DNA from: Parasitella parasitica NRRL 2501
Lineage: Eukaryota > Fungi > Mucoromycota
Reading direction: 5' to 3'
Assembly: GCA_025201805.1 (NCBI GenBank)
Contig: MU619296.1
Span: 62,001-126,000, forward strand
Length of the DNA stretch: 64,000 bases
Each line of letters begins with the position of its first letter. The first letter of the stretch is position 1. Position numbers and translations under genes: made by a program. Under the pieces are notes generated by a model. It had not been told where the DNA came from and ran no database searches. It saw only the letters and a list, made by a program, of their open reading frames with translations. Of the stretch, positions 1,008-7,295 are shown one piece after another.

Positions 1008-2185
1008 TAATAATCGAACCAAAAAGAATGAAGAGAAAAAAGAAAGAGTAAAAAACGAGGGAATCCTTGTAATCTGTATTTATGCTTCAAAAGGAGGGGG
1101 GGGGGGGAGTTATGAAAAAATTCTTTAATTGTTCAAATGCCAAATTTGGTGATTGACACGACATTGCTTCTATTGTTGTTTTATTGGATTTGCTTCCTGA
1201 GCGTTATACTGGTGCCAGGTTGAACGAATAGCTTTGCTAATCTACTCTGAAAAAAGTGCGTATGTATGGTGGTTTCAATGGGTGGAAATTTTGAGCAAGA
1301 GCCCATTACTAACAGAGTTTCATGCAAGTGTGCATTCTCAATTGAACCCACTGACTTTGCCAATGCAAAAGAAGTTTTCTTTTAGGACGACTTTAGGCAA
1401 TTAGGAGAACCTTTAAATAAAAAAAGGAATTTTTAATTATTCGTATAACGAGTAATATCGTCCACTATGATCGTCTTTATCGTCAGAATGATCTTCCAAA
1501 TGACTGTCTTGCTTTTTAGGATCAGGCACATTCATGTTCAAGGGTTGCGCGAAAAGACCAGATCGCAAACACACTCCTTCCTTTCATTGTTATCGACTTC
1601 TAAATGTGGTTTCTAGAGATTATTAGTAGCTTGAAATTAAACTATCTTCTGAACTGGAGGATTCCAAACAGCTAAATTTAGCTGCAGAGCGAGCTCACAT
1701 TGTTAGACCCCTTTTTGTCAGCACTACCAAAGAGGCTCTTGAAGGGTGCACATTGCTTCAATGCTTTTTAGGATTATTACATCACCTAGCCAGAGCACGC
1801 CGGCCCAAATAACTGCAGATTGAACAGACCTTGCGGCTTGCAAACTTGATCGTGTTCGCGATATGTATCCACCATAAAATCAAATCACCAGATAAATTAA
1901 AATGAGACTCAGGAATGAAATAACTGACTCTCTTTTTTTTTCTTTGAAAAAAAAAATCAAACTCTAGTAAGCGTATAGGTTTTTACTTTCTTTTATTTAT
2001 TATCATCATTGATAAAACGAAAAGAGGAAATCATAAACCCTTATTTTTTCTATATATAAAAAGGAGAGGATACAAAAAAGACCAAGAACAAGGTATAAGA
2101 ACGAACGAGACAAGTCTATAATTTTATTCATTTTATAAACATTAGAGACTTTCTTTATTCCTACATTTACATAACATTAGAGTTC

Positions 2186-2665
2186 ATGGATAACTGGGCT
2201 TTGCGGGAAAACAACGATTCTCCTGTTGGAGTAAATGGTTTTGTGGACAATATGCCGTTACTATGGAAAATGGGGTTCGAGCCTCCTCTCATGCCAGCTA
2301 ATGAAAACGATACTTCGCAATCATTCAATGACTTTAATCAGTCAACGTCGAATTCAGATTTACCTGACGATGATGACCTAGTCGATAAGTTGTTTCGTGA
2401 AAGCATGCAAGGTAAATCCAAATAGGAAAATTATCTTCTGATAAATCCTAATACTGGTAACAGATATGCACCAACATCAAGCTATGTCAAGCAACGTGGA
2501 AATCAAGCAACCTGATAATCCATTGAACATGCTTTTATCATCACCACCTCCACAGCCTATAAACGCGCCAATTATCAATCGAAAACGTTCACGATCGCCT
2601 GTCCTTACTGAACAGTCCAACAGCTATGTTTCTATAGAACAATCAAATGCACCACCTCCATCACT

Positions 2666-2696
<31 letters not shown>

Positions 2697-2911
2697 CAAC
2701 CACTTCAAAACGACTCCACGAGGCAATTACCGCAACCATCATTTACGCAATCTTCGTTATCTCAACAGCAGCAGATTCAACAACAGCAATCCCAATTATT
2801 GCTACAGCAGCAATTACAAGCTCGGCAACCGTTGCCTCGGCCGCCTATGATGCAACAAAATTTACCTCGTGGATTGCCTACGCAACCTGTACCGCCGCAA
2901 CAGCAAAAGCC

Positions 2912-2965
<54 letters not shown>

Positions 2966-5900
2966 TCACCCAGCACCACAGTACTATCCACAAGGACCTG
3001 TACCGCAGCAGCCCTTTTTCCCTCATCATCAAACCACTTTTATGCCAATGGCACCCATCCAGCAAAATGCACCTGTCCGTCCATCTACGCCACCCATTCT
3101 TGCCAATTTCCAAAACAAATCATTTCAGCATCTCAACATGTCACCACACCACCGAAAATTAGACATCCTGCCAGGACAACCTTATCAACTTGTAAACAAT
3201 ACATATCCTAACAATGGCATGGCAGAGCCCACGATAGTCAATGCTTCGCCGTCGCCCCCAGCTCCAGCCCCAGCCCCAGCTCCTCCTCCTCCTTCTGCTC
3301 CTGTCAGAAGCGCAACCACCATTGTATTAAAAACACAGCCAGCGCAAAAGACGGCAATTCCTCTTAGACCTCAATTGAAAGTGCACTTTGTTCGACATGG
3401 CTTAGACTCTACCATTTTTGACGATCCAACAGATCCCATGAAACCCGACCTGGATATTTTGTCTTTGCGGAAATTGACTGTGGCGACGTTATGCACGCTG
3501 AACGTCAACATTGCCCTAGAGGAATTGCCAGAGGTGGACATTGAGGAGCCGTTGTCCACCGACTCACATCAAGTGCTGCCAGCAGCTGCTATGCAGGTGA
3601 TTACCAAGATGGTGCTAGGGACTTCCGGTGATAAAGAGGTTGCGCAGACACTTGCATCTCAAATTTCAAACGGGGATTTGGTCGCCTTCCAGCGCCTAAT
3701 TGTAGCTGGTCTGCGAAGCAAGAATATCGTTATTCATACGGTGCTGAATGAACAGACGTCAGTGAATAATGGCACAAGGAGATCGGCAGCACCAGATGAC
3801 GACATCATTGATCTGACTCATGTCAAGTATGAACCACCTCACAACGTAACACGCTTATTTTTGAGGCTGTATCGATACATACTCAACATGCTGCTGTCGA
3901 CACCCGATTGCTGGCCTTTTATCCAGCCTGTGCCAGAAACCGCATTTTTGTACCATCGAGAAATCAAGAACCCAATGGATCTGTACACGGTGGAAGAGAA
4001 TATATGGCGTGGAAAGTATACCAAGTTTGCCAGATTCGAGAATGATATGCAGCGCATTTGGAAAAATGCAAGACTATTCCATCGCAGTTCAGGCACGATC
4101 CCGAGACATGCAGAAAATTTAGAGTCTTTATTCACAAAGATTGTGATGGATATCAAGAGACAGAATTCGTAAGTGTTACTTGCACCTTCTGATTAATAGT
4201 CGAGAAAGTGTGTGTATGTGTGTATATGTATGCTAACGGTACATCATGGGCTATTTTACTAGTAAAAACAAGCCAGCGTCCGGTCCTCATGATTTCCAGT
4301 TTGACCCAACCAACACTCTGCCAGAGGAATCGGATTTTTCATACCCCCCCATAGAGCAAGTGTTTTCAGAGACAAGCACCGTGTATACCATCTCTGCACT
4401 CTCGCCGCTAGAACCCAAAGCTCGGAAGGCAGGCTTGAAAGATGAAAATTCGCTCTACTTGCAACTCAATGGCCCATTTTTCCAAGCCGTGGAGCGCATG
4501 AAGTCTGACTTGGACGGCAACCACCGACAAGTGCCTCGGTTTTACATTGCAAAAAATCGAACACTGCTGCGTCAAGTTCGTTCTCAAGGCGTGTTGGCTA
4601 TATTTTACAATACGAAAACAACCCGAGTCCGCCACAGTAAAAACATTCGCATCGATACAGACATGATCCTGGCTTACCCGGCTAGCGAATTTTACGACCT
4701 GGATCAAATCAACGAGTGCACAGTTGACTTTTCGCCAAAAGGCTGGATTCATCTACGACCGCTGCGCGTAGTCAACCGTATTTCGTTTGAGGCTAACGAC
4801 TACATTGACCGGGACTACTTTAGACGCATGTTTGCTACTGCAAAAATGGCAACAGACGACAAGAATGGACACCACAATCCAGAGACCAAGCTGTTGCTCA
4901 AGAAGATTGTTCGACAAATCCTAGGACTACCCGAGAGGCAAGAAGTCGAGAAGCAACAAGTGCCTGTCAAATCAAAGCCAATCATCAAACTGCACACTTT
5001 TGTAAAGGGCGACGACCACCGACTCGTCATCCAACAACGCATGTTGAAAACCAAAGAAGACGAAGCGATGGAGGCAGACGAAGGGTCGGACGATGAAAAG
5101 CCTTCGCCTAAATCGACCGACGTCAAGTCTCAACACAACCCTAAATCGAGTATACCCACAATGTCAAATGAAGAGCGTTTAGGGACGAGAGAAGTCAATC
5201 ACGAGGTCTGGAGAAAGCTGTTTGACGGTAGGTTGTACAGTTGCATATTGCTTAAACGCCCATCTTTGACACGCTATTGTATTTACCGTAGTATGTGCAA
5301 GCAAAGGAATTTTTATTCGAAATATAACGTCGCACGGAAATATCAATTGGAACTCGCCTGATTCCGAGGGATTTTTTAAGCGTGTTTATTTCTTTGATGG
5401 TATCGTGGTCCAAGCGTTTAGACAGATGACCATGTATCAACGCATCACTGAGGTTGCATGTTTAATGTAAGGTTGTTTGGACGCTCTCCTTGCGCCGATG
5501 CTAACTTTTTTTTTTTTTTTTTGTTCCTTTTTCTGATGCATAGGAAACTGAGAAATTTACCACACATGGCGCAAATGAGAGAAATTTTGTTTAACGATAA
5601 TGGCGACGTTGCGGGCCTATCGATGGAAAAGTAAGGTTATTGTCGTCAAGATGCGACATGTGTTGCTAACATCACTATTTGGAACGTAGATATCAGACTA
5701 CCCTGAAACGGTATGCTCATGTACACTCGCACCATCGCTTATCCGCATACCAGAAATACGACGTTATCTACCAGATGTTGTTGTGCATGAAGACAATCCA
5801 CAAGGCAGGCCTCGCCCATCGAGATTTGTCCGAAGTGAACATCATGCTCAACATATTAGAGGGGCAATTCCTGGAGGATGGCAGCGAAAAAGTGTACCTG

Positions 5901-6661
5901 TACCTGATCGATTTCGGCAAGGCAGTGTTCTGCGAATCTTCTGATGTCCGCGATTGGTTTGTCGATGTACCTAGAGCTGATTGGGAATACGACGGGGACG
6001 TTGTCCCCGAGACTAAAGAAGAACTAGATGCATGGTGCGATTCCCTCCCTTGGGTAAAGGGCAAACCAGACCACGGCTACCGTATGTATAGGTAAAGTTC
6101 GGTCGATAATTGATGCGAGTAGAATACGCTTGCTGACTGCAATTGCGATTTAGATCCATCCAAACTTTGCCAAAGACGAGATCTGATAATCAGGTTCTTC
6201 CTTGGTTGATCCACCCACAAGCTGAAGACATTTACTCGATTGGAGTCATGATATGGAAAGTATTTACCGACACGGAACCATGGCGTGGAATTTTGGAGAC
6301 AGACTTGCAGGGTTTGCGCTACGTAGCCGAAGACGATTACCGAATCCAAAGAGCGTTAGAAGGAGAAGTCCACGGCGAACTGAGCCGCCAATTGCTGCTG
6401 AAATGTCTAAAGACTAGGCCTCAAGATCGTGAAAACGCAGCCGACATTTTGAATTGGATTAGCCAAGACAATGTGCGAGAGGGTTTAATTGGCGAATGGA
6501 AAATGTACTCCTCAGACACACGAGGCACTAGAAGAGCCAAAAGCTTTTATGGGTTTGAAGACACAGGAGTAGAAGAAGAAGAGAAGAAGAAGCCTCGAAG
6601 AAAAGCAACTACTACCGGCTCAAAACAACGAGGCCGTCCCAAAAACCCCAAGGATACCTAA
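2186..6661 (+). CDS. PolyQ/Pro-rich, bromodomain, atypical protein kinase and AT-hook protein, ~1355 aa (exons 2186-2411, 2464-4168, 4263-5227, 5292-5466, 5544-5630, 5690-6091, 6154-6661)
   Basis: All six GT-AG introns keep frame (4068 nt total). Bromodomain motifs WPFIQPV, PMDL and IWKNARLF. Kinase motifs HRDLSEVN, DFG and DIYSIG. C-terminal KQRGRPK. Confidence 0.85.
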
Positions 6662-7295
6662 TGTTTAGACTATCTCTGCATTTTATTTTATTTTTTTCGT
6701 ATATTCCATGAAAGCATCAAATAGCCTCCTCCCTCTGTTTTAAAATATTTAACACCCAAATGTACATAAAATGCCATTTTTTTTTCCTCCCCCCCCCCCA
6801 AGCAAGAGACATGCTGTGAATAGTATGTCTGGCAAAATTACTTGATGGCTATATAGCTGAGATGTCACTTGTATAAAAACGGTTTATGCTTGTGCGATGC
6901 TAAATGTGTATGTTTAAAATTACGTATACACAGCAATGTGTTTACTGCTTTGGGCAACCGGTATCCTTGAGCAAGACATGTGCAATCAGAAGGCAATCCT
7001 TTATCTTGATTAAACGCAAATTTCGGTAAATCTCTTCTGCCTGGTTTAGAAGATGATGGTCGGAGCGGGGTAACTTTGTGCCTTGTTCATCGTGTGGCTC
7101 TTTCAATCCTGGGTATCTACTATGTTATCATATAGACGACAGTTTGCAGTTTGATGATTAATACAAGGAGTAAAATTTATTTCAAGAATTTTCCAGGCCC
7201 TGCCCATGTAATAAAATAAATAAAGAATATGGTTGTTTTTCAAGGTTTTGAATAGAGGGAATAATAGGTTATATAAAGTACATTTTTTAATCATT

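What the first reader, a model, noticed from the sequence alone, without database searches (positions are those of the whole stretch)
5292..5850. Kinase lacks the beta3 lysine but has a WNK-style lysine in the Gly-loop
Seen: the spliced N-lobe reads SEGFFKRVYFFDGIVVQAF...ITEVACL. The VAIK position holds Gln (IVVQ), while the last Gly of GxGxFG is Lys (AAG at 5378-5380). The alphaC Glu, the HRD/N residues and DFG are intact, the catalytic loop is HRDLSEVN, and the activation segment is long with no APE. Established: WNK kinases use this beta2 lysine (GRGSFKTVY). Inference: an active kinase with a possibly independent catalytic-lysine migration, rather than a pseudokinase.
Basis: partly seen in the sequence, partly recalled or inferred. 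Interest (0 to 1): 0.85.

Follow-up and report, generated by a model that had tools for sequence, protein, structure and literature searches.

The report
Bromodomain kinase with relocated catalytic lysine
A transcribed fungal gene joins a bromodomain to an odd protein kinase whose usual ATP-anchoring lysine is a glutamine while a lysine sits in the glycine loop, as in WNK kinases, and both residues never vary across an uncharacterised family found only in zygomycete fungi.

Summary
A spliced RNA contig and collinear orthologue models support exon 5292-5466. Its translation holds Lys (AAG 5378-5380) at the third Gly-loop place and Gln (CAA 5411-5413) at the beta3 Lys place. The alphaC Glu, HRD, Asn and DFG are intact.

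One mRNA encodes about 1355 aa: a Q-rich N-terminus, a bromodomain, a conserved middle domain of weak EVE/YTH-like fold, and this kinase.

The kinase belongs to a small, discrete family. It occurs in Mucorales, Endogonales, Mortierellales, Glomeromycotina and Basidiobolus.

In 39 aligned domains the Lys, Gln and alphaC Glu are 39/39. The catalytic Asp is 37/39 and the DFG Asp 38/39. The catalytic-loop Lys is always Ser, and the residue after DFG is Lys in 38/39.

An AlphaFold model (pLDDT 85.7) places the Lys at the start of beta2 and the Gln in mid beta3.

The same genome has three ordinary WNK genes. They score lowest against the family profile, but an AU test does not reject a family+WNK clade, so independent origin is likely and not shown.

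Activity is inferred, not tested.

The parts
2186..6661 (+). Whole coding region, about 1355 aa. Exons: 2186-2409, 2462-4168, 4263-5227, 5292-5466, 5544-5630, 5690-6091, 6154-6661 (stop TAA 6659-6661).
   Evidence: Spliced RNA contigs with GT..AG joints. ATG and phase bookkeeping. Collinear Pilobolus orthologue P0003.
3879..4100 (+). Bromodomain. The acetyl-lysine-binding Asn place holds His (CAT 4080-4082).
   Evidence: Pfam PF00439, E 2e-17. Alignment to PBRM1 and TAF1 bromodomains. The same His occurs in several Mucorales members, while Asn is kept in two others.
4351..4908 (+). Conserved middle domain with a weak EVE/YTH-like (PUA-like) fold.
   Evidence: Alignment A2 across Mucorales, Mortierellaceae and Basidiobolus. 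AF2 pLDDT 77. Foldseek best hits are YTH/EVE at E 3e-3. The VIA wide top 16 are all EVE/YTH/ASCH/McrB-N at Z 5.3-6.8. No Pfam match.
5292..5466 (+). Kinase N-lobe exon: beta1, Gly-loop, beta2, beta3 and the start of alphaC.
5378..5380 (+). Lys (AAG) at the third Gly-loop place, at the start of beta2.
   Evidence: 39/39 in A1. The AF2 model has beta2 at residues 44-49, with this Lys as residue 44.
5411..5413 (+). Gln (CAA) at the beta3 Lys (VAIK) place.
   Evidence: 39/39 in A1. It lies in mid beta3, residues 52-57 of the model. It aligns with the VAIK Lys of MSK1 (3kn5) in the profile search.
5450..5452 (+). alphaC Glu.
   Evidence: 39/39 in A1. It lies inside helix 62-74 of the model.
5544..5630 (+). 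Exon C, 87 nt: end of alphaC through beta4.
   Evidence: Joint 5630|5690 with a shorter side of 87 letters. tblastn of orthologues.
5817..5840 (+). Catalytic loop H-R-D-L-S-E-V-N, with Ser (5829-5831) where Ser/Thr kinases have Lys.
   Evidence: In A1: H and R 39/39, D 37/39, S 39/39, N 39/39. This exact motif occurs in 66 of 96 family proteins that carry a catalytic loop.
5910..5921 (+). D-F-G-K: DFG intact, followed by a near-invariant Lys.
   Evidence: In A1: D 38/39, G 38/39, K 38/39. DFGK occurs in 79 of 89 proteins.
5922..6220 (+). Long, conserved, structured activation segment (interrupted by intron 6092-6153) without APE. It holds the motifs P-D-H-G-Y-R and S-I-Q-T-L-P.
   Evidence: pLDDT is 80-95 over this stretch, with helices at 185-190 and 211-220.
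6629..6640 (+). AT-hook-like R-G-R-P in the basic C-terminal tail.
   Evidence: Similar motifs lie C-terminal of the kinase in six other Mucorales members.

Best explanation
The window holds an expressed gene for a chromatin-directed atypical protein kinase. It combines a Q-rich N-terminus, a bromodomain, a conserved middle domain, and a full two-lobed kinase domain with a basic tail carrying an AT-hook-like motif.

In the kinase, the ATP-anchoring Lys of beta3 is replaced by an invariant Gln. An invariant Lys at the third Gly-loop place (first residue of beta2) most likely takes over its job. This is the solution already known from WNK and POMK.

That Lys lies two residues before the conserved beta2 Val. 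Its side chain should therefore face the nucleotide pocket, where it can reach the ATP phosphates and the conserved alphaC Glu.

HRD Asp, Asn and DFG Asp would do the usual chemistry. The catalytic-loop Lys is missing (always Ser), and the near-invariant Lys after DFG may stand in for it.

Shown: gene model, expression as spliced RNA, domain make-up, fold, family range and residue conservation. Inferred: ATP binding, phosphotransfer, the role of each Lys, and chromatin targets.
For: - Splicing and a single mRNA.
- Pfam bromodomain and Pkinase.
- The bromodomain+kinase layout occurs in Mucorales, Glomeromycotina, Mortierellomycotina and Basidiobolus.
- The family is small and discrete: 61 representatives in 1.84 billion proteins, and a gap from E 1e-76 to 1e-6.
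- Invariance in A1: Gly-loop Lys 39/39, beta3 Gln 39/39, alphaC Glu 39/39, HRD Asp 37/39, Asn 39/39, DFG Asp 38/39, DFG+1 Lys 38/39.
- No other invariant Lys or Arg stands in beta1-beta3.
- AF2 model pLDDT 85.7 and pTM 0.84, with beta2 at 44-49, beta3 at 52-57 and alphaC at 62-74.
- Canonical kinase fold: Z about 24, rmsd about 3 A over about 265 residues, matching active-state CDK2, RET, EGFR and DAPK1.
- The Gln aligns with the VAIK Lys of MSK1.
- The Lys aligns with the WNK Lys.
- WNK1 and POMK are active through a beta2 Lys (PMC10211241; PMC13519141).
Against: - No activity, ATP-binding or coordinate data. The tools return no atom positions, so the direction of the Lys side chain rests on strand periodicity.
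- Two phosphate-contacting lysines are missing at once (beta3 and catalytic loop), and there is no APE. By the sequence definition this is a pseudokinase.
- One paralogue lineage with HRN and N-F-R in place of HRD and DFG (L003, P0035) still keeps the Lys, Gln and Glu. These residues may therefore also serve structure or nucleotide binding without catalysis.
- Local sequence alignments disagree on the beta3 register. 3oz6 and 3lij shift it by 3-4 residues. The basic residue at that shifted place is not conserved.
- The bromodomain has His at the acetyl-lysine Asn place, so acetyl-lysine reading is uncertain.
Confidence: 0.55

Rival explanations
1. It is a true pseudokinase. The domain binds nucleotide or partners but transfers no phosphate, and works as a scaffold or switch attached to chromatin-reading domains. 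The invariant Lys, Gln and Glu hold the N-lobe or a bound nucleotide in place.
For: The beta3 Lys, the catalytic-loop Lys and APE are all absent. The HRN/N-F-R paralogues keep the Lys, Gln and Glu although they have lost the catalytic Asp residues. Only one Gly of the Gly-loop is left.
Against: HRD Asp, Asn and DFG Asp are kept in 37-39 of 39 members from lineages as distant as Glomeromycotina and Basidiobolus. Dead kinases usually lose these. The few members that did lose them form a separate derived lineage. WNK and POMK show that a beta2 Lys supports catalysis.
Confidence: 0.27
2. The beta2 Lys is not an independent invention. The family is a fast-evolving offshoot of WNK kinases that arose in an early zygomycete and inherited the WNK lysine arrangement.
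For: The Lys is in the same place, within a similar G-x-[FY]-K-x-V-Y motif. The AU test does not reject a family+WNK clade (p 0.39). hhalign probability between the family and WNK is 95.5%, as expected for any two kinase groups.
Against: The three WNKs of the same genome score 8.8-15.9 bits against the family profile, versus 28-37 bits for CDK- and CAMK-like kinases. WNK structures are absent from the 60 best of 1395 PDB sequence hits and from the top structural hits. The free tree puts WNK with STE-like kinases. WNK marks are missing: H-R-D-I-K-C-D-N, D-M-G, APE, a 17-residue beta2-beta3 spacing (11 here) and the OSR1_C-like domain.
Confidence: 0.25
3. The domain is an ATPase or a small-molecule kinase rather than a protein kinase, as in RIO, Bud32 or Kdo-type kinases, whose catalytic loop also reads D-L-S/T-x-x-N.
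For: Weak Pfam matches of exon D to Kdo (E 0.0037), RIO1 (0.012) and choline kinase (0.13). Ser stands at the catalytic-loop Lys place and there is no APE.
Against: The C-lobe has the protein-kinase alphaF to alphaI core (D-I-Y-S-I-G, invariant Arg326), and the best fold matches are protein kinases at Z 24. The Pkinase score exceeds the others by far.
Confidence: 0.08

Closest known systems
WNK kinases (WNK1-4; three homologues in this same genome at G000 C73, C123 and C42)
   Same: There is no Lys in beta3, and a Lys stands at the third place of the Gly-loop, followed by x-V-Y. The alphaC Glu and HRD are kept.
   Different: WNK has H-R-D-[IL]-K-C-D-N with the catalytic-loop Lys, D-[LM]-G, a normal APE, a longer beta2-beta3 hairpin and an OSR1_C-like domain. 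The family has Ser in the catalytic loop, D-F-G-K, no APE, a 75-residue activation segment and a bromodomain. Profile scores show no special kinship. The phylogeny is inconclusive.
POMK / SGK196 (protein O-mannose kinase)
   Same: The VAIK Lys is lost and a compensating Lys in beta2 is needed for activity (PMC10211241, PMC13519141).
   Different: POMK also lacks HRD and DFG (it has MCD and DLD instead) and phosphorylates a sugar. Here HRD, Asn and DFG are canonical. No sequence comparison with POMK was run here.
Haspin (histone H3 Thr3 kinase; from my own knowledge, not tested here)
   Same: It is a chromatin kinase with a divergent kinase fold, no catalytic-loop Lys and no APE.
   Different: Haspin keeps the beta3 Lys and has no bromodomain.
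RIO / Bud32 / Kdo-type kinases and fungal FunK1 (PF17667)
   Same: The catalytic loop is of the D-[LI]-S-x-x-N type. Weak Pfam matches were seen.
   Different: All those scores are below the curated cut-offs. The family has the full protein-kinase C-lobe.
Bromodomain proteins with reported kinase activity (BRD4, TAF1; from my own knowledge)
   Same: A bromodomain and a kinase activity sit in one chromatin protein. The bromodomain here is most similar to those of PBRM1, TAF1 and BPTF.
   Different: BRD4 and TAF1 have no canonical protein-kinase domain. This protein has one.

Membership tests
Eukaryotic protein kinase superfamily (Pfam PF00069) | Two-lobed kinase fold and a profile match over the curated cut-off | tested here: met
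   Exon D scores 32.5 bits against a cut-off of 31.7. Full orthologues score 50-62 bits. The AF2 model matches kinases at Z about 24 and rmsd about 3 A.
Eukaryotic protein kinase superfamily (Pfam PF00069) | beta3 (VAIK) Lys | tested here: not met
   Gln in 39/39. It lies in mid beta3 of the model.
Eukaryotic protein kinase superfamily (Pfam PF00069) | alphaC Glu, HRD Asp, catalytic-loop Asn, DFG Asp | tested here: met
   39/39, 37/39, 39/39 and 38/39 respectively. All four are present in the window.
Eukaryotic protein kinase superfamily (Pfam PF00069) | Catalytic-loop Lys (HRDxK) or the Tyr-kinase Arg, and the APE motif | tested here: not met
   Ser in 39/39. S-I-Q stands where APE would be.
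WNK kinases | Lys at the third Gly-loop place together with no beta3 Lys | tested here: met
WNK kinases | WNK catalytic loop (H-R-D-[IL]-K-C-D-N), D-[LM]-G and G-T-P-E-F-M-A-P-E | tested here: not met
   The window has H-R-D-L-S-E-V-N and D-F-G-K and no APE. The genome's true WNKs have all three marks.
WNK kinases | OSR1_C / CCT-like domain after the kinase | tested here: not met
   PF12202 finds only the three WNK loci in the whole genome and nothing in this contig.
WNK kinases | Closest sequence kinship and a common clade | tested here: inconclusive
   The WNKs score lowest against the family profile and are not sister to the family in the free tree. The AU test does not reject the clade (p 0.39; small panel of 7 outgroup kinases).
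Pseudokinase (sequence definition: lacks the VAIK Lys, HRD Asp or DFG Asp) | At least one of the three residues is missing | tested here: met
   The VAIK Lys is missing. The definition says nothing about activity, as WNK shows.
Bromodomain (PF00439) | Profile match over the cut-off | tested here: met
   63.4 bits against a cut-off of 21.7.
Bromodomain (PF00439) | Acetyl-lysine-binding Asn at the end of helix B | tested here: not met
   His (4080-4082) aligns with that Asn in PBRM1 bromodomains. Some family members keep Asn.
YTH / EVE (PUA-like readers of modified bases), for the middle domain | Fold match and profile match | tested here: inconclusive
   The top 16 VIA hits are all of this superfamily, but at Z 5.3-6.8, below the tool's trust level of 8. 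Foldseek gives E 3e-3 and TM 0.3-0.4. No Pfam match. The aromatic cage was not examined.

The most novel reading that the evidence does not exclude
Zygomycete fungi share an ancient, undescribed chromatin kinase that, independently of WNK and POMK, moved both phosphate-contacting lysines: beta3 to the Gly-loop, and the catalytic loop to the residue after DFG. It kept a fixed Gln in beta3. It is tethered to a bromodomain and to a second reader-like domain of EVE/YTH fold.
Probability: 0.2. Interest if true: 0.85.

Novelty: new variant of a known kind. Interest (0 to 1): 0.62.

Why it matters
Only two kinase lineages, WNK and POMK, are known to work with the ATP-anchoring lysine moved to beta2. 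A third lineage with canonical HRD and DFG but a second missing lysine would test how freely the kinase active site can be rewired. It would also warn again against calling kinases dead from motifs alone.

The fusion to a bromodomain, conserved across Mucoromycota and Basidiobolus, points to an unstudied chromatin-signalling enzyme. This group includes the agents of mucormycosis and the arbuscular mycorrhizal fungi. No member turned up outside these zygomycete lineages in the two protein searches run here.

Tried and rejected
- **Earlier findings.** The search of earlier findings near the place returned nothing.
- **WNK pattern search.** A DNA pattern for H-R-D-L-K-C-D-N found nothing in the genome. 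The genome's WNKs read H-R-D-I-K-C-D-N, which my pattern excluded. They were then found through PF12202.
- **Single-sequence PDB search.** Local alignments to MAPK (3oz6) put an Arg of the paralogue, not the Gln, at the VAIK Lys. I rejected this register because that place is Gly in the window and Thr/Lys in the other paralogue, and because it leaves no room for a beta2-beta3 hairpin.
- **Profile search.** The 3lij alignment is shifted by three residues, while 3kn5 puts the Gln on the Lys. The AF2 strand assignment decided between them.
- **hhalign against WNK.** It aligns the two Lys residues but does not resolve beta3.
- **Tree and AU test.** The panel was too small and the branches too long, so the result is inconclusive.
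- **Middle domain.** The ESM Atlas by features gave nothing usable (scores 0.88). Pfam on the middle-domain alignment gave nothing.
- **Literature.** Four searches for a bromodomain kinase or a kinome study of Mucoromycota found no description of the family.
- **Joined protein left out.** The joined spliced protein of the window was never searched or folded. Each exon was sent by reference. The collinear orthologue P0003 (82-86% identical in the kinase exons) and the single-exon paralogue L002 served as stand-ins.
- **Complex prediction.** Not used, because no protein-protein binding is claimed.
Full report
**1. What is in the sequence**

The window is eukaryotic, with short GT..AG introns and ctaac-type branch sites. 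Reading exon 5292-5466 in codons from 5294 gives a Gly-loop S-E-G-F-F-K. The Lys is AAG 5378-5380.

Next come R-V-Y-F-F, a D-G turn, and I-V-V-Q-A-F with Gln at CAA 5411-5413. An alphaC-like stretch follows, with Glu at 5450-5452.

Exon 5690-6091 holds H-R-D-L-S-E-V-N (5817-5840) and D-F-G-K (5910-5921). About 75 residues then separate DFG from the alphaF motif A-E-D-I-Y-S-I-G. There is no APE; S-I-Q-T-L-P stands in its place.

**2. Is the exon real and spliced that way?**

One public run holds the region at 0.79 of sampled words. Its contigs skip six stretches that begin with GT and end with AG, so they come from spliced RNA.

A single 3491-nt contig lies on 2974-4168, 4263-5227, 5292-5466, 5690-6091 and 6154-6787. 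The 87 contig letters between the 5466 piece and the 5690 piece equal the length of exon 5544-5630. The 5630|5690 joint is listed with a shorter side of 87 letters. The 5466|5544 joint itself is implied, not listed.

Four annotated orthologues (Pilobolus, three Rhizopus) map by tblastn onto exactly these exons.

The same contig shows that the kinase is the C-terminal part of a much longer protein. The coding region runs from ATG 2186 to TAA 6659-6661, about 1355 aa in seven coding exons.

**3. The whole protein**

- The N-terminal exon carries Q-rich CAG repeats.
- Residues encoded by 3879-4100 are a bromodomain (PF00439, E 2e-17).
- 4351-4908 encodes a domain conserved in family members of Mucorales, Mortierellaceae and Basidiobolus.
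- The tail has an R-G-R-P AT-hook-like motif at 6629-6640.
- Pfam finds the kinase only weakly in single exons: 32.5 bits for exon D. In full-length orthologues it scores 50-62 bits.

**4. The family**

A search of 1.84 billion representative proteins with exon D found only 61 relatives at E below 1e-9. After those come generic kinases at E above 1e-6.

A profile search of the 5.8-billion-protein set gave 46 family hits at E 1e-76 or better, then a gap to 1e-6.

Named members come from these groups:

- Mucorales: Rhizopus, Pilobolus, Gilbertella, Parasitella, Mucor, Absidia, Phycomyces, Choanephora, Apophysomyces and others
- Endogonales: Jimgerdemannia, Endogone
- Mortierellales: Linnemannia, Entomortierella, Podila, Modicella
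- Glomeromycotina: Ambispora, Rhizophagus
- Basidiobolus

The bromodomain plus kinase layout is found in Mucorales, Mortierellomycotina, Glomeromycotina and Basidiobolus. The window's genome (32.8 Mb) has two paralogues:

- L002 has an intact H-R-D and D-F-G.
- L003 has H-R-N and N-F-R.

**5. Conservation**

The alignment holds 39 kinase domains with a mean column identity of 42% (A1).

| Residue | Count in A1 |
|---|---|
| Gly-loop Lys | 39/39 |
| beta2 Val or Ile two places later | 39/39 |
| beta3 Val | 39/39 |
| beta3 Gln | 39/39 |
| alphaC Glu | 39/39 |
| His and Arg of HRD | 39/39 |
| Catalytic Asp | 37/39 |
| Ser at the catalytic-loop Lys place | 39/39 |
| Asn | 39/39 |
| DFG Asp | 38/39 |
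| Lys after DFG | 38/39 |

Among 61 proteins with an N-lobe, 53 match a strict pattern. The rest either keep the Lys and Gln in a slightly different context or are broken or unrelated models.

The Gly-loop Lys is the only invariant basic residue in beta1-beta3.

**6. Structure**

The joined window protein has no reference, so I modelled the collinear Pilobolus orthologue with alignment A1. It is 82-86% identical to the window over the kinase exons.

The AlphaFold model has pLDDT 85.7 and pTM 0.84. DSSP gives:

- beta2 at residues 44-49, beginning with the Lys
- a two-residue turn
- beta3 at 52-57, with the Gln at 55
- alphaC at 62-74, with the Glu at 68

In a two-residue hairpin, residue 46 (the Gly-loop Val) pairs with 55, and 48 pairs with 53. 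This matches the Val57-Lys72 and Leu59-Ala70 arrangement of PKA, numbering from my own knowledge. So the Gln is the structural equivalent of the VAIK Lys, and the Lys is the equivalent of the third Gly.

The Lys sits two residues before the pocket-facing Val on the same strand, so its side chain should face the pocket too. This is inference: the tools give no coordinates.

The profile search of PDB sequences puts the Gln on the VAIK Lys of MSK1 (3kn5). Another alignment (3lij) is shifted by three residues.

The fold is an ordinary protein-kinase fold. It matches at Z about 24, rmsd about 3 A and about 265 residues, tied among FGFR, EGFR, RET, CDK2-cyclin A, CaMKII and DAPK1. Foldseek agrees. 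WNK does not stand out.

**7. Relation to WNK**

The genome has three ordinary WNK genes. They were found through the OSR1_C profile and read directly. They carry G-K-G-A-Y-K-V-V-Y, E-V-A-W-N in beta3, H-R-D-I-K-C-D-N, D-M-G and APE.

The family Lys aligns with their Lys in hmmsearch and hhalign, so 'WNK-style' is an accurate description.

Evidence against special kinship:

- The WNKs score 8.8-15.9 bits against the family profile, the lowest of 22 kinases of the same genome. CDK- and CAMK-like ones score 28-37 bits.
- In a small maximum-likelihood tree, WNK groups with STE-like kinases and not with the family.

Evidence that leaves the question open:

- The family sits on a very long branch.
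- The AU test does not reject a family+WNK clade (p 0.39, lnL difference 2.0).

Independent origin is the more likely reading. I put it at about 0.6, but it is not demonstrated.

**8. Active or dead?**

For activity:

- The four catalytic residues other than the beta3 Lys are kept across lineages that separated very long ago.
- The few losses are confined to one derived paralogue lineage.
- Two unrelated kinases, WNK1 and POMK, are known to use a beta2 Lys; mutating it kills them (PMC10211241; PMC13519141).

Against activity:

- The catalytic-loop Lys is also absent, and APE is absent.
- The H-R-N paralogues still keep the Lys, Gln and Glu.

The near-invariant Lys right after DFG is unusual. 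It may replace the catalytic-loop Lys, but this is speculation.

My estimates:

| Reading | Weight |
|---|---|
| Catalytically competent kinase that uses the Gly-loop Lys | about 0.55 |
| Nucleotide-binding pseudokinase | about 0.27 |
| ATPase or small-molecule kinase | about 0.08 |

**9. Side results**

- The bromodomain has His where the acetyl-lysine-binding Asn should be. The same holds in several Mucorales members but not in Chlamydoabsidia or a Mortierellaceae member.
- The middle domain model (pLDDT 77) matches only EVE, YTH, ASCH and McrB-N domains at the top of two independent structure searches. The scores are weak: Foldseek E 3e-3 and VIA Z 5.3-6.8, under the tool's trust level of 8. 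Pfam finds nothing. This is a lead, not a finding.

**10. Novelty**

Four literature searches found no description of this family. Database names are 'hypothetical protein' or 'kinase-like domain-containing protein'.

The mechanism proposed is of a known kind, a beta2 lysine. What is new here:

- the family itself
- its second missing lysine
- the fixed beta3 Gln
- the fusion to a bromodomain

**Limits**

- The joined spliced protein of the window was not searched or folded. Exons were handled one by one by reference, and orthologues served for modelling.
- The PKA and Haspin comparisons rest on my own knowledge.

Noticed in passing
window 4080-4082 (within bromodomain 3879-4100): The acetyl-lysine-binding Asn of the bromodomain is His (N-A-R-L-F-H). 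The same His occurs in Pilobolus, Rhizopus, Absidia and Mucor members. Asn is kept in Chlamydoabsidia P0014 and Mortierellaceae P0058.
   Followed up: partly
window 4351-4908: A conserved middle domain (motifs P-R-F-Y-I-A-K-N-R and P-K-A-W-I-K-L) whose AF2 model matches only EVE/YTH/ASCH/McrB-N domains, which read modified bases. The matches are weak (Z at most 6.8) and there is no Pfam hit.
   Followed up: partly
window 6629-6640: An AT-hook-like R-G-R-P in a basic C-terminal tail. One to four such motifs follow the kinase in six other Mucorales members, but none was found in the Mortierellaceae, Glomeromycotina or Basidiobolus members examined.
   Followed up: partly
L004/L028 (G000 C73), L005 (C123), L006 (C42): The genome holds three typical WNK kinase genes with G-K-G-A-[YF]-K, E-V-A-W-N, H-R-D-I-K-C-D-N, D-M-G and an OSR1_C-like domain.
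   Followed up: partly
L003 (G000 C127:29227-32595, minus strand ORF 1045-3186): A paralogue with H-R-N-L-S-M-V-N and I-N-F-R-N, so both catalytic Asp residues are lost. It keeps the Gly-loop Lys, beta3 Gln and alphaC Glu. It has a long Ser/Gln-rich repetitive N-terminus. Related forms occur in Parasitella and Mucor plumbeus.
   Followed up: partly
window 2655-2973: CAG/CAA repeats encode polyglutamine runs in exon 2. The RNA contigs break there.
   Followed up: no
window 2091-2143 and 2410-2461: Two further small introns near the 5' end. The first lies upstream of the ATG at 2186, so it is in the 5' UTR.
   Followed up: no
window 6789-6900: A different RNA contig (2431 nt, much higher word depth) starts two bases after the end of this gene's contig. 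A neighbouring, apparently highly expressed transcript abuts the 3' end.
   Followed up: no
P0003 residues about 995-998 against window 6084-6157: The Pilobolus gene model lacks the Y-R that spans the exon D/E junction in the window and in most family members. This is probably a small annotation difference at the splice site.
   Followed up: no
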